Source: Gracilinanus agilis (Eukaryota). Taken from it: DNA of 64,000 bases. Where the stretch lies: positions 673,035,104 to 673,099,103 of the forward strand of contig NC_058130.1 of assembly GCF_016433145.1 (NCBI RefSeq), written 5' to 3'. Below, in pieces: positions 16,501 to 22,500 of the stretch. Under the pieces are notes generated by a model. That model had not been told where the DNA came from, searched no databases, and worked only from the letters and a program-made list of their open reading frames with translations. The position numbers were made by a program, and so were the translations under genes. Within the stretch, counting starts at the first letter, position 1; every line of letters begins with the position of its first letter.

Positions 16501-19500
16501 TCCTTGGTGGAAGAGTGGTAAGGGTGGGCAATGGGGGTCAAGTGACTTCCCAGGGTCACACAGCTGGGAAGTGTCTGAGGCCAGATTTGAACCTAGGACC
16601 TCCCGTCTCTAGGCCTGACTCTCAATCCACTGAGCTACCCAGCTGCCCCCCTATAGTAACCTTCTAACTGGTCCTCCTCGGTTTAAGTTTCTCCACTTCT
16701 GTCTGTCCATCACAGATGCCAATATGATTTTCCAACATTATAGATCTGAACATACTTATTGTGCCCAATAACCTCCATGGCTTCCAATTACCTTTAGGTT
16801 CAAATATGAACTCCTCTGTTTGGCATAGAAAGCTCTTCACAACCCGACCATTTCCTATGCCTAGTTTCCACAACTTCTTGCCCTTTATGGTCAAGAAATC
16901 ATAATGTCTGACTTGTTCCTTCCATTGGAGCTCAATGAGGCTCAACGTCTTTGAATTGGCTGTGACCATGCTAGGAAAGGGTCTTGGACTTCATCTCTGA
17001 CTCTTGAAATCCTCAGTTCCTTTAGGAGGCAGTTTAAACACTACCTTCTTTAGGAGGCCTTTCCTAGACAGTCAGATGTTAAGGCCTTGTCCCTGGAAGC
17101 TATCTTCTAGCAGCTCTGTATCTTGTTCATTATCTCTTTATGTACACACTGTCATATTGTCTTCCTTACAAGAATGTAAATTCCCTGGGGGAAGGGACTG
17201 TTTTGGCTTATTCACTGTATTTCATCTTAATTTGCCTGAGGCTGAGTACTTTGTACACCATGCTTTAGGGACCTGGGTGACTAGCAATTCCTCATCTTGC
17301 TTATGGAGAGAATAAGGAGTAGGTTCAAGTAGAAGGAGAAAAGATTCAAGAAATACAAAAGAAAAAAATGTACATTTGCAAGGGTGGTCAGGGTGGAAAA
17401 GATTATGAGTTTGGGCTATGGCTATGGAAAATTTTCCCTTATAGGTCTTTAAAATGGAAAGGCCATCTTTTTGGCCTTTCTTCCATCTGTTTGGATTGGT
17501 GTCAGTGTATTGTCAGGGAAGGATGTCTGAAGGTGGAAGCTGTACATAAATTATATAACCACCATGGTTTCTTTTCAGAGAGCTCTATGTAGGCAACTGG
17601 TGGCCCAGTAGACACAGTCAATAGGAAGACCTGATTTAAAATCTGATTATAAGCCACTTACTAGCTGTGTGACTCTTGGCAAGTTGCTTAACCTCTGTCC
17701 AGTTTCTTCATTTGTAAAATGGGATAATAATGACACCTGCCTCAGAGTATCACTGTGAGGATCACACACACACGTACATATTCTCTTTATTTTACTTACG
17801 TTTATATGATATATATTAATACATAACATACATGACATTATATATACATATATATGTATATATGTATATATACTTCTTTCTGTCTTAGTAACAACTCTAA
17901 GACAGTAGGGCAAAGGCTAGGCAAATGTGGCTGACTTGCTAAGAGTCACACATCTAGGAAGTATCTGAGGCCATATACTTGGACCCACATCTTCCTGACT
18001 CCAGGCCTGGTGCTCTATTATGCAACCTAGCTGCCCCTAAATGATGAGACTATAAAGTACTTAGTGCAGTGCCTGGAACATAGTAGGTGCTATATCAGTG
18101 CTTCCCCTATTTCCCTAGATTTGGGATGATCAGTAAGAAATTTTTTGAGCTTTTTATCTGTAATATTTTGAAAAATGGTCCCCATTCCTTTCTATTAGTA
18201 GTATTACATGAGTAACTTACACAAAGGGTATCATTCTTACCTTGTACATTGCTCCATTGTGGAGCGGATAAACTGGCCGATCAAAGCCAGGAACTGTTCA
18301 GTGTATCGGGAATGAAATTGCTTCAGAAGAGTAAGAAGTCCTAGGACCAAGGGAGGCCAGTCAACTGGATCTGTGGGCTTTCGGCAGACCATCCCTAAAG
18401 GCAAAATATAACACCCATGTTAAGTGCTTCCAGTGTGGATCTCAAAATGTCTCATCTCCACTCAATTGTTAATGGAATAATACTGTTAGCTTGTGTGAGC
18501 AAGTCACTCTTCTCTGGGTTTGTTAAACTCTGAGACACAATTGTGAGAAAATGTGTAAACTCTACTAAATTATTTTAATTTTTATATTTTTATAGAAGCT
18601 TTTTGTTTTGACACAGTATTCACTCTCCCAATACTTCAGAGGATTTTAGCAACTGTGATTGATTGATGGTGTACTTAACTTTCCACTCTTGACAGACAGA
18701 AATATCTGAAATTGCTGTATCTGAACTGAACATTATTGTCATTTAGAGTTAACTTAATTTTCTTTGTACTGGACACTGTGCATTATTGCCCTTTTGGTTT
18801 ACTTTCTTACGGATCAGTTCAATGCCATATTTTTTTTTTTCAAAGTAAACAGGTTTTATTTAGAGCATCACTTGGAAAACTATAAATATTGAGGGGTAAG
18901 CATGTAACTTTAGGTATGTAGATATATAAACTGGAGGATTAACTACTCAGCTTCTCTCTAAGATTATGTCAATAATTTAAAATGTATTGTGAATACTAAC
19001 TCTTTAACTGGGTTCTACTGTTGTGTACATAAAAAAACACACCCATAAGTAAATCAGATATTAGTATGAGGTCCAGTTAATAGTAATAGTATATTGTCTA
19101 TAATCCCTTTTATTAATATTTTTACAATATATCATCAATGAAAAGTTGTGATTTTCAACATATACATCCCCTGTATGAACTCAGCTTCTAAAACTCTCCT
19201 TTATACAGACGTCATTCTTCTCTCTCGGTCACAGTCTTCCCATCCATCAGGAATTCCTAGCCCATCCTGACTTTCAGAAACCCCTTAAGACTCCTCCTTA
19301 GGTTAGGTGATTTTATTACTGTCTGCTGAGGACCAGAGTTGGTAGGAGTCACTTTTGGCTGGTCAAGGCAAACAAATGGAGTATTGCAGTCTGAAGAATT
19401 CCATTGTGATTAGTCTAATTTTCCAAATTCAGGTTCTACTATGATACATGCTGATGAAAGGTAAATATATTATATCCTAAATCAAAGGTTTTCACATGAT

Positions 19501-22500
19501 CCAACCTTTAGCACCTTGCAAGTTTTCTAACCATTCCCCATCTTTGCCTAAGGCTTATATTTAATTGACATTAACAATTACAATGATAGTTTTTCAAATA
19601 ACTATACTGACTCTTAGCTTAACAGGCATATAACAAAAATAAGCAAATAATCAGCTCTTTATTGATTGTAGTAAATGGAACTCCTCTTAAAAGTGGTAAG
19701 GAGCCTATAGCTAAAGATCCTAAAAGTACAGCAAGTTATGGAAAGATCTAATGGCCTGTGCCAGATCTGTCCAACAAGCCTTAAAAGAAAAAAAACAAAA
19801 AACAGCAAGAAACTAAAAAAGAGATCATAATACTCTTCATCTTAAATGTACTGAATACCTTGTAATAGTCAGCCTATCACAAAGAACTATACTGGCTGAC
19901 ATGTGGCCCTATTTCCCTTCCTTAAGATTATCTATCCTTAATGCAGAAGAAAGCTGACTGACATACTATTCGTTTGTAGCAATTCCTCAGAAGCACTGCA
20001 GGCAGAATCCTGTAGCACAGCATTCACATTTTCTTGCTCAGGAGACATGGGCTCTTGTTTAATCTGCACTGATGAGTCTGGAGCTGGGCATGTGATACTC
20101 CCAGGAGCCTGGAAAGCAGGAGGTGTGCACACCCAAAGTGGCACTCCAGGGGCAGATGGTGATATATGGGAAGGGGGAGTCTCCAAAAAGAGAGGGAAAA
20201 AAGGACTAGGCAGAGGAGGGGGATCAGCAGCTGTCTGAGATCTGCTCTTTCGCTCACGGGAAGGGCTGCAGGGGACCTGTTCTGTCCGCTCAGGAGGTTC
20301 ATAAGTTTCTTGTAATCCTTGTAGAATCTGTATTCTGTGGGTCCTCAGGCCACTCATCTCCATCGTTATCTGTTGTTTCAGCATAAGGAGTCTCTGGACT
20401 TCCACAAAAGCTGCCTGAAGGGCTGCCCGGGCCTGCAGAAGGTTGTTATCCATACACTGCAAGGATTTACTCAGCTCCTCCTCCCGTAAAGAAATATTCA
20501 GCAGTTGGTCAACCTCAGAACGTTCTTTTTTGCCTTTAATTTTCCTTCTTTTATTCTTTCTTTCCAGACTTGGAAGCTCAGGTGAAGATCCATCTCCAGT
20601 TGCCCTGCGCTTCTTCCGGAGGCCCTGGCCGTCATTCTGCTCCGCCCCAGAGGTACAACTGCTGTCTGTAGCAGCATCCACCAAACTAGAGATGCCAAGA
20701 CCTGAGGAGGCATTAGACGATAACGAGTTCCCTTCTCCATTACTTTCCTGAGTGTTTTGATTCTCAGAAAGAGGTGTTGAGCTCTCCTGCCTGTTCAGTT
20801 CTTCTTGTCTGGCAGAGCGCATCAAGGATATCATTTGGTCAGGGGGCAACTGGGCACTATGCCTCCTTCGAGTGGCAACACTTTCAACCCTTTCGCCTGC
20901 CCTGGAGGAGGAAGCCAGAGGCATCATGTCCTGTTTAAAGTTCACGTTTGCTTTCTGACCTTGAGCTGTCTGCAGTGAATTACTGGGTGGAACAATCTGC
21001 TGGGGTTCATTTTCCTTTCCTGTAGCCTGCTCAGTGAAGAAGTTGTACATGGAGGGAGTCCTGTCCATGATCACACTGCTCTCAGAAAGACTACGTTTTC
21101 TTGCCAGTGCAGGTGATGTAGCAATGGAAATACCTTCCCACTGGAAACCTTCTAAACTGGACAGGTCAGGTTCCTCATCCAAATCCAACACTTCCTGCTC
21201 ATTCTGAACTATTGGTACCATCTCTATGCCAAACCTGGGTAAACCTTTGCCCAGCTCCTGCTTCTTCTTGGTTACCTGCTGAATGACCTGTACCCAGTTG
21301 ACATTTCTTTGAGAAGCATTCAGAATCTGCCTTAGAGTTGGTTTGAGTCCTGACTCCTTCTCTGTCTCACTCTTTCGATGGCCACTAACACTTCGAATGC
21401 GGCGTGCATTATTGAGATTGGGCTCAGGAAGATGAGCCCCAGGTTTGCTTTTCAAACTGATGTGCCGGGTTAGATCTCGCTGGAGAGAGGCAGGAAAACC
21501 AAGTTTGCTTAGTTCAGGAAGCAGAGAGCCTGAAGGTTGCCTTGTGCCTCCTTTCTGGAGGTCAACATCCAAATTACTGCTCTCAAAGCTTTCTGTTTCA
21601 AAAGGCAAACCTGATTTGACAGGTTCTTCAATCTGGATATCTTCCAATGATGTTTTCAAGTCTAGCAGTAAGCCTGACTGAGGACTACCTGCAGATGCTG
21701 CAGACTCCATTTGAAACTCTGATTCTTTGTGGTGAACTGTGGAGCCATCTGAATTAATAGAGCATTTCTCAGTTGTTTTATTAGTTTTGTCATCTCTCTC
21801 TTTCTCAGTTACAGGATGTTCACATTCTAAAGCGCCACAAAGTGAACCTTTGGGATTTAAGGGACCAAGATTTTCGACTTTTGCACCATGTTTTTCAAGA
21901 TCTGATAGCTCTGCTTCACCTCTATCTTCTGGTGCACATTCTTGAAGCTCAGTGTTCAAAGAGCCTTTCACAGACTCTTCCCCATTCTTACTTTCTGATG
22001 CAGAGCTCCTGATACTTTTGGCATTGCTCAGGAGTGGATTTTGTAGGGGCTGACTACATTTCAACACCTCCTTACCTTTCTTCAAGATTTCACTTAAATT
22101 GTCAACAGGCTCTTTCTGAGTCCCATCAAGCACAGTTTTATTTCCTTTTAATACACAAGAACAAGAACTACGTAGTTTAGATACATAAGAGGAATTCTGG
22201 TTGTCTTCTAAGCTAAGTGTATTTGAGTGATTCTGACATTCTCCAGGAGTTGCAGACAAAGGTTTTGTATTTTTCGAGAGGTTCTTTGAATCTTGTTTTT
22301 GAGATGAGGATCTAGTGTTTGGGAATGGAAGGAGTGGAGACTTTAGTGATGGCATTTTATGTGAACTGTTCTCCTGTTCAGGTATTACTCTAGACGGGCA
22401 AGTGGTCATTGCCTCACTAGAAACAGTGTGATCAGAAGTGACCTTGTGATCAAAGGACCCCGACTGGTTTTCTTTCTGTGTTTTCAGCTTTGTGGAATTA

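What the first reader, a model, noticed from the sequence alone, without database searches (positions are those of the whole stretch)
18833..19966. The retrocopied mRNA looks like an intronically polyadenylated, WD40-less ZNF106 isoform
Seen: ZNF106 homology ends at ...CAA ACG AAT A and the next six bases are GTATGT (19961-19966), a consensus 5' splice donor. The frame runs 9 more unrelated codons (SMSVSFLLH*) and then 1.1 kb of AT-rich sequence to an AATAAA plus A-tail. Established: full-length ZNF106 continues about 600 aa further, through a WD40 domain and C-terminal zinc fingers. Inference: the template mRNA skipped this donor and was cleaved and polyadenylated inside the following intron, so the retrocopy is a molecular record of a truncated isoform, probably from germ line or early embryo.
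Basis: partly seen in the sequence, partly recalled or inferred. Interest (0 to 1): 0.75.

Follow-up and report, generated by a model that had tools for sequence, protein, structure and literature searches.

The report
Retrocopy of prematurely polyadenylated ZNF106 mRNA
A young opossum retrocopy of ZNF106 ends with the first 1.1 kb of a parental intron plus an added A-tail, so its template mRNA was cut and polyadenylated inside that intron; this is a clean but ordinary example of a retrocopy preserving an unannotated transcript form.

Summary
On the minus strand, window 18833-23914 is an L1-type ZNF106 retrocopy flanked by a perfect 14-nt target-site duplication.

I fetched ZNF106 loci from five marsupials. 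The retrocopy is about 99% identical to Gracilinanus agilis ZNF106 and 93-95% identical to Monodelphis. Nine introns are precisely absent.

The last block (20310 to 18841) is colinear with the parental exon and the first 1,126 nt of the next intron, which is 14.1 kb long. All five marsupial gene models place the exon boundary at AATA|GTATGT.

Homology stops 14 nt after a parental AATAAA. There the parent reads GTCTCCGGAGT and the retrocopy has an A-tail, so the tail was added to RNA and not templated.

Three features fit a real poly(A) site: the donor is the weakest I could score, the intron is the longest, and the 1.1 kb is better conserved than the rest of the intron.

Caveats:
- The same template also used an acceptor 5 nt downstream, which frameshifts the ORF. 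That molecule did not encode the long WD40-less protein from the normal start.
- No annotated truncated isoform was found.

The scan had already noted this retrocopy (s1-192275). Verdict: new member of a known kind, moderate-to-low interest.

The parts
18819..18832 (.). 3' copy of the target-site duplication (TCAATGCCATATTT on the + strand)
   Evidence: family D7: 14 nt, 100% identical to 23915-23928
18833..18840 (-). Non-templated poly(A) tail of the retrocopy: 8 A, plus up to 3 more that are ambiguous with the duplication
   Evidence: at this point the parental loci read GTCTC(C/T)GGAGT and have no A-run
18855..18860 (-). AATAAA poly(A) signal, 14 nt upstream of the cleavage point
   Evidence: present at the homologous position in Monodelphis, Gracilinanus, Trichosurus and Vombatus; lost in Sarcophilus
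18841..19966 (-). Tail of 1,126 nt, equal to the first 1,126 nt of the parental intron that follows the ELLQTN exon. It acted as a composite-terminal-exon 3' UTR.
   Evidence: contiguous with the exon in L002 30579-32041 (98.7%) and L001 41298-42759 (93.0%). The intron is 14,090 nt in L002.
19961..19966 (-). Unspliced 5' splice donor GTATGT
   Evidence: annotated donor in 5 marsupial gene models; the same hexamer in horse and blue whale; lowest score of the 9 donors resolved.
19938..19967 (-). Read-through codons SMSVSFLLH plus TAA
   Evidence: identical in Monodelphis, Gracilinanus, Sarcophilus and Trichosurus; Vombatus has SMSVSFLLR
19967..20310 (-). Last ZNF106 exon present in the retrocopy (residues 1149-1262 of G. 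agilis P0121).
20311..23914 (-). Nine upstream ZNF106 exons joined without introns
   Evidence: ten colinear blocks against L001 and L002
23431..23432 (-). Exon-exon junction made with an acceptor 5 nt downstream of the annotated one. The parental ACAAG is missing, which gives a frameshift and the stop QSR*.
23915..23928 (.). 5' copy of the target-site duplication
   Evidence: family D7

Best explanation
A ZNF106 pre-mRNA in the germ line or early embryo of a Gracilinanus-lineage opossum had its first nine introns removed. It was not spliced at the weak donor ATA|GTATGT that follows the ELLQTN exon. Instead it was cleaved and polyadenylated 1,126 nt into that 14-kb intron, 14 nt after an AATAAA (intronic polyadenylation with a composite terminal exon). 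L1 machinery then reverse-transcribed this mRNA into a new site, leaving a 14-nt target-site duplication.

Shown here:
- colinearity of the tail with the parental intron;
- the exon boundary;
- the non-templated A-tail;
- precise loss of the upstream introns;
- the duplication.

Inferred:
- the tissue in which this happened;
- that the site is a regularly used, conserved marsupial poly(A) site and not a one-off event. I put that at roughly even odds to 60%.
For: - Target-site duplication: perfect 14 nt at 18819-18832 and 23915-23928.
- Exon blocks: ten colinear blocks against the Monodelphis and Gracilinanus ZNF106 loci. The last block runs uninterrupted from the exon into the intron: L002 30579-32041, 98.7%, 12 mismatches and 3 gaps.
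- Exon boundary: annotated proteins of five marsupials continue ELLQTN|R with the split codon A|GA, so the boundary is AATA|GTATGT. The next exon lies 7-14 kb downstream.
- A-tail: homology ends at ...AATAAAACCTGTTTACTTTG. The parents continue GTCTC(C/T)GGAGTATATT and the retrocopy has A8-11.
- Splice context: the donor scores 0.36 bits on an approximate position matrix, the lowest of 9 resolved donors. Its intron is the longest of those resolved.
- Conservation within the intron: the first 1,119 nt are 94.0% identical between Gracilinanus and Monodelphis, against 86.6% for the rest. They align fully with three Australian marsupials, against 27-57% coverage for the rest.
- Conservation against other introns: this intron start is the best conserved of five large introns, 0.92 against 0.86-0.89.
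- Signal conservation: AATAAA is kept in 4 of 5 species.
- Sequencing runs (suggestive only): 17 small runs of 'organism B' hold 0.24 of the sampled words. For Monodelphis the expectation is 0.26 for exon plus tail and 0.10 for exon alone.
Against: - There is no direct RNA evidence.
- No C-terminally truncated, WD40-less ZNF106 protein appears among 15 of the 17 cluster members that were listed, nor among the top 120 hits of a search whose length window excluded most full-length proteins.
- No paper in the library links ZNF106 with intronic polyadenylation.
- The template also carried a frameshifting alternative acceptor. That is what one expects of a noisy, non-productive transcript.
- Sarcophilus has lost the AATAAA.
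- Conservation of the 1.1 kb exceeds other intron starts only moderately.
Confidence: 0.9

Rival explanations
1. One-off cryptic event. The poly(A) site is real in this one molecule, but ZNF106 does not normally use it. The retrocopy records processing noise and not an isoform.
For: - The same template used an acceptor 5 nt downstream that frameshifts the ORF, which suggests a sloppy transcript.
- No truncated isoform is annotated.
- No literature supports such an isoform.
- Sarcophilus lacks the hexamer.
Against: - The 1.1 kb is more conserved than the rest of the intron and than other intron starts.
- AATAAA is kept in 4 of 5 marsupials across roughly 80 My.
- A weak donor and a long intron are the classic setting for intronic polyadenylation.
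- Word shares in many small runs fit presence of the tail.
Confidence: 0.4
2. Internal priming. L1 reverse transcriptase primed on an A-rich tract inside an unspliced or intron-retaining ZNF106 pre-mRNA, so no cleavage occurred at this point.
For: Retrocopies from internal A-rich priming are known (own knowledge). The tail is AT-rich.
Against: In all five parental loci the sequence after the homology break is GTCTC(C/T)GGAGTATATT and has no A-run. The break lies 14 nt after AATAAA.
Confidence: 0.03
3. The tail is not the ZNF106 intron. It would be the normal 3' UTR, another locus, or an assembly chimera between the retrocopy and the parental gene.
For: None was found.
Against: - The tail is colinear with the intron start in five species.
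- The normal last exons lie 40 kb downstream.
- The tail carries about 10 retrocopy-specific changes against the parent, so it is not parental sequence.
- The tail ends in an A-tail followed by the matching duplication.
Confidence: 0.01

Closest known systems
Processed pseudogenes as 'genomic fossils' of transcript variants (Shemesh et al. 2006 PNAS). The reference was seen in the bibliography of PMC5470649. The paper itself is not held, so its content is from my own knowledge.
   Same: A retrocopy preserves a non-canonical processing variant of its parent mRNA, so the variant can be read from genomic DNA.
   Different: The variant here is an intronic cleavage and polyadenylation event, with the added A-tail itself as proof. 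It is not an exon-skipping or alternative-splice variant. The species is a marsupial and the gene is ZNF106.
Semi-processed retrocopies, for example rodent preproinsulin I (PMC3449122)
   Same: Intron sequence of the parent is carried into a retrocopy that otherwise lacks introns.
   Different: In those cases a whole intron is retained between two exons of a partly spliced pre-mRNA. Here only the first 8% of the intron (1,126 of 14,090 nt) is present, it is terminal, and no downstream exon follows.
Intronic polyadenylation with composite terminal exons: IgM secreted versus membrane forms, and the genome-wide surveys by Tian et al. 2007 and Singh et al. 2018 (own knowledge)
   Same: An unspliced weak donor, a long intron, a poly(A) signal 10-30 nt before cleavage, a short read-through peptide, and loss of the C-terminal domains.
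   Different: Use of the site is inferred from a DNA fossil and from conservation, not from RNA data. No ZNF106 event of this kind turned up in the paper library.
Known ZNF106/Zfp106 isoforms: two promoters, with a short muscle isoform (PMC4706115; PMC11295049)
   Same: Same gene, with isoform diversity affecting which domains are present.
   Different: The known short isoforms lack the N-terminal part and keep WD40 plus the C-terminal zinc fingers, the fragment sufficient for G-quadruplex RNA binding. The form recorded here would be the opposite: N-terminal part only, lacking that module.

Membership tests
L1-mediated processed retrocopy | Parental introns precisely absent | tested here: met
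   Nine exon-exon joins. Ten colinear blocks against L001 and L002.
L1-mediated processed retrocopy | 3' poly(A) tail not present in the parent genome | tested here: met
   A8-11 at 18833-18840, against GTCTCCGGAGT in the parent
L1-mediated processed retrocopy | Flanking target-site duplication | tested here: met
   14 of 14 nt at 18819-18832 and 23915-23928
L1-mediated processed retrocopy | Insertion at a TT|AAAA-like endonuclease site | tested here: inconclusive
   In retrocopy orientation the site reads TTG|AAAT. This is only a loose match.
L1-mediated processed retrocopy | Empty orthologous site in a species that lacks the insertion | not testable with these tools
   The host-gene locus of Monodelphis could not be fetched. 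Short exon peptides cannot reach the full-length host protein in the length-filtered search.
Intronic polyadenylation (composite terminal exon) transcript | Upstream exon reads through its own 5' splice site into contiguous intron sequence | tested here: met
Intronic polyadenylation (composite terminal exon) transcript | Canonical poly(A) signal 10-30 nt upstream of the end, with a U/GU-rich sequence downstream in the gene | tested here: met
   AATAAA 14 nt upstream. The parent continues GTCTCCGGAGTATATT.
Intronic polyadenylation (composite terminal exon) transcript | Non-templated A-tail at that end | tested here: met
Intronic polyadenylation (composite terminal exon) transcript | Other introns spliced, so a mature mRNA and not raw pre-mRNA | tested here: met
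Intronic polyadenylation (composite terminal exon) transcript | Recurrent RNA 3' ends at the site in present-day tissues | not testable with these tools
Only indirect word shares are available.
Semi-processed (intron-retaining) retrocopy | A complete parental intron retained between two exons | tested here: not met
   Only the first 1,126 of 14,090 nt are present, and no downstream exon follows.

The most novel reading that the evidence does not exclude
Marsupial ZNF106 has a conserved, unannotated intronic poly(A) site. Its regular product is an N-terminal protein of about 1,270 aa ending in SMSVSFLLH. That protein lacks the WD40 propeller and the C-terminal zinc fingers, the module shown in mouse to bind G-quadruplex RNA. 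It could therefore act as a separate or antagonistic form, and the 1.1-kb intron start would be its selectively maintained 3' UTR.
Probability: 0.4. Interest if true: 0.45.

Novelty: new member of a known kind. Interest (0 to 1): 0.33.

Why it matters
It shows, without any RNA data, that a specific intronic site in ZNF106 was used for cleavage and polyadenylation in cells that contribute to the germ line. It also points to a moderately conserved 1.1-kb intron start that current marsupial annotations treat as plain intron.

If the site is used regularly, ZNF106 has a form lacking its known RNA-binding module. ZNF106 is a gene tied to motor-neuron degeneration in mice.

As a principle this is not new. 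Retrocopies recording transcript variants, and intronic polyadenylation itself, are both well established.

Tried and rejected
1. Monodelphis as parent. Identity of 93-95% first suggested an old retrocopy. The multi-species alignment showed that the retrocopy shares the Gracilinanus-specific states, and identity to L002 is about 99%. The window species is therefore G. agilis or a very close relative, and the retrocopy is young: about 0.5% own-lineage change.

2. Laying reads on window 18400-24300. No read-level evidence was obtained. Two local scripts on the closed machine still read the stretch 18833-20310 for word counting and alignment parsing.

3. Search for an annotated truncated isoform, by cluster members and by a length-restricted protein search. 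None was seen. The latter lists only the best 120 hits, so absence is weak.

4. Literature. There were no joint hits for ZNF106 or retrocopies with 'intronic polyadenylation'. Shemesh 2006 is not held.

5. Rfam scan of the tail, to explain its conservation by a hosted RNA gene: nothing at E <= 0.1.

6. Homologous poly(A) site in eutherians. The intron does not align beyond the donor, so no statement is possible.

7. Host-gene identity (WASHC5, from note s1-192275) was not tested.

No human contig was fetched or compared. Human proteins appeared in the hit lists and were not used.
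Full report
**What is in the window**

On the minus strand there is an A-run followed by a 14-nt direct repeat (+ strand TCAATGCCATATTT). The repeat occurs at 18819-18832 and again at 23915-23928, 100% identical. Between the two copies lie two long open frames.
- ORF 23428-23931 holds two C2H2-type zinc fingers (weak Pfam matches).
- ORF 19938-23444 has 1,168 codons and ends ...[15 protein letters not shown].

The long frame matches mammalian ZNF106. Marsupial proteins are closest: 95% over 1,155 residues without a gap to Monodelphis P0001. 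Homology ends exactly at ELLQTN, residue 1273 of 1922. GTATGT is at 19966->19961, AATAAA at 18860->18855, and the sequence between has GC 0.31-0.35. The A-tail is shorter than stated: 18833-18840, plus three A shared with the repeat.

**The parental locus**

The ZNF106 gene of Monodelphis domestica (L001) was fetched through its annotated protein. The loci of Gracilinanus agilis, Sarcophilus, Trichosurus, Vombatus, horse and blue whale followed. blastn of the retrocopy against L001 gives ten colinear blocks that correspond to exons. The tenth block, window 20310->18841, is a single uninterrupted alignment to L001 41298-42759. It runs from the start of the exon to the base before the A-tail.

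tblastn of the annotated protein places the coding exon at L001 41299-41640 and the next coding exon at 55175. The 1.1-kb tail is therefore the beginning of a 13.5-kb intron. In all five marsupial gene models the protein continues ELLQTN|R with the codon split A|GA. Each locus reads ...ACGAATA|GTATGTCAG... at the donor and ...TTTAG|GAGAG... at the acceptor.

**Which species, and how old**

The multi-species alignment showed the retrocopy sharing many Gracilinanus-specific states. Block by block it is 98-100% identical to the G. agilis locus, against 93-98% to Monodelphis (one short 70-nt exon is identical to both). For the exon-plus-tail block it is 98.7%, with 12 mismatches and 3 gaps in 1,470 nt.

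With the other species as outgroups, about 10 change events fall on the retrocopy lineage and 4 on the parental lineage. The window therefore comes from G. agilis or something nearly identical. The insertion is recent, a few million years at ordinary mammalian rates (inference).

**Why this is cleavage and polyadenylation, not something else**

Homology with every parental locus stops after ...CTAAATAAAACCTGTTTACTTTG. The parents continue GTCTC(C/T)GGAGTATATTCC and the retrocopy continues with A's and then the target-site duplication. There is no genomic A-run on which reverse transcriptase could have primed. The A-tail was therefore added to the RNA, 14 nt after a canonical hexamer and ahead of a U/GU-containing stretch.

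Four features mark an L1-mediated copy of a mature, polyadenylated RNA:
- nine upstream introns are removed precisely;
- the tail is terminal;
- no later exon is present;
- the whole unit is bracketed by the duplication.

An assembly chimera is excluded, because the tail carries its own substitutions relative to the parent and ends in the A-tail plus duplication.

**Is the site likely to be used regularly?**

Evidence for:
- On an approximate donor matrix (frequencies from memory) ATA|GTATGT scores 0.36 bits. This is the lowest of nine donors that I could resolve in the G. agilis gene.
- Its intron (14,090 nt) is the longest of those resolved. A weak donor and a long intron are the recognised setting for intronic polyadenylation (own knowledge: Tian et al. 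2007).
- The first 1,119 nt of the intron are 94.0% identical between Gracilinanus and Monodelphis, against 86.6% for the remainder.
- Those 1,119 nt align over their whole length with three Australian marsupials, where only 27-57% of the rest aligns.
- Compared with the first 1,119 nt of four other large introns of the same gene, this is the best conserved: 0.92 against 0.86-0.89.
- The hexamer at the cleavage site is kept in four of five marsupials; Sarcophilus lost it.
- The nine read-through codons are unchanged in four species and differ by one residue in Vombatus.
- No Rfam family explains the conservation.

The sequencing-run index adds a hint only. It listed 17 small runs of one coded organism, from seven studies, each holding 0.24 of the sampled words. 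The Monodelphis locus shares 0.26 of all 31-mers with the query when exon and tail are counted, but 0.10 for the exon alone. The organism is coded and the RNA label is a guess.

Evidence against:
- The same template used an AG 5 nt inside the large exon. The parental ACAAG is missing at 23432|23431. This shifts the frame and gives QSR* (testing note s1-192277). This molecule was a doubly non-canonical, presumably non-productive transcript. It did not encode the long WD40-less protein from the normal start.
- No truncated isoform is among the listed cluster members or the length-restricted search hits.
- No paper in the library links ZNF106 to intronic polyadenylation.

**What the form would be**

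A protein read from the canonical start through this end would keep the N-terminal zinc fingers and the long low-complexity region. [quoted passage not shown] In mouse, that C-terminal fragment is sufficient for G-quadruplex RNA binding and N-terminal fragments showed no binding (PMC11295049). The known short Zfp106 isoforms are the reverse kind: truncated at the N-terminus and made from a second promoter (PMC4706115).

In horse and blue whale the donor hexamer is the same, but the read-through frame stops after two codons (SM*). The intron does not align further, so nothing can be said about a eutherian equivalent.

**Comparison with the known, and verdict**

Retrocopies that preserve transcript variants, semi-processed retrocopies (PMC3449122) and intronic polyadenylation are all established. 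This is a well-documented instance that combines them, and it is not a new kind.

I put the intronic-polyadenylation origin of the template at 0.9. That the site is a regularly used, conserved marsupial site I put at roughly 0.4-0.6.

Handling notes:
Two local scripts still read that stretch.
- No human contig was fetched or compared.
- The N runs in the window were left alone.

Noticed in passing
window 23431-23432 (minus strand); L002 12232-12236: The retrocopy lacks the first 5 nt (ACAAG) of the large exon. It is joined at the AG inside that exon, an alternative 3' splice site that frameshifts and gives the stop QSR*. This explains the split into two ORFs.
   Followed up: yes
whole retrocopy, window 18841-23913, against L001 and L002: The window species is Gracilinanus agilis or a near relative, not Monodelphis: about 99% against 93-95% identity to the respective ZNF106 loci.
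   Followed up: yes
L005 about 29595; L007 about 24153: Horse and blue whale keep the same donor, CAATA|GTATGTAA. Read-through there would add only SM before a stop. The donor hexamer is conserved across therians although it is weak.
   Followed up: partly
L003 (Sarcophilus), position homologous to window 18855-18860: The AATAAA at the cleavage site is replaced (TTAGATAAC) in the Tasmanian devil. Upstream AATAAA hexamers, for example within TATTAATAAAAGGGATTATAGAC, are conserved in all species aligned.
   Followed up: no
window 24390-24470 (minus strand): SINE-like sequence (…ccattgtgccacttagccacccc…) just upstream of the insertion site. It was not classified.
   Followed up: no
L004 1-63127, minus strand: The Trichosurus record carries a called gene for a 211-aa Tim17-family product whose range spans the whole ZNF106 locus on the opposite strand. 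This is probably a very long-intron or mis-joined model.
   Followed up: no
   Followed up: no
window 18833-23914, host context: Note s1-192275 places the retrocopy in WASHC5 intron 26 in the host orientation. If so, host pre-mRNA would carry the retrocopy, which complicates any RNA evidence from this species. This was not tested here.
   Followed up: no
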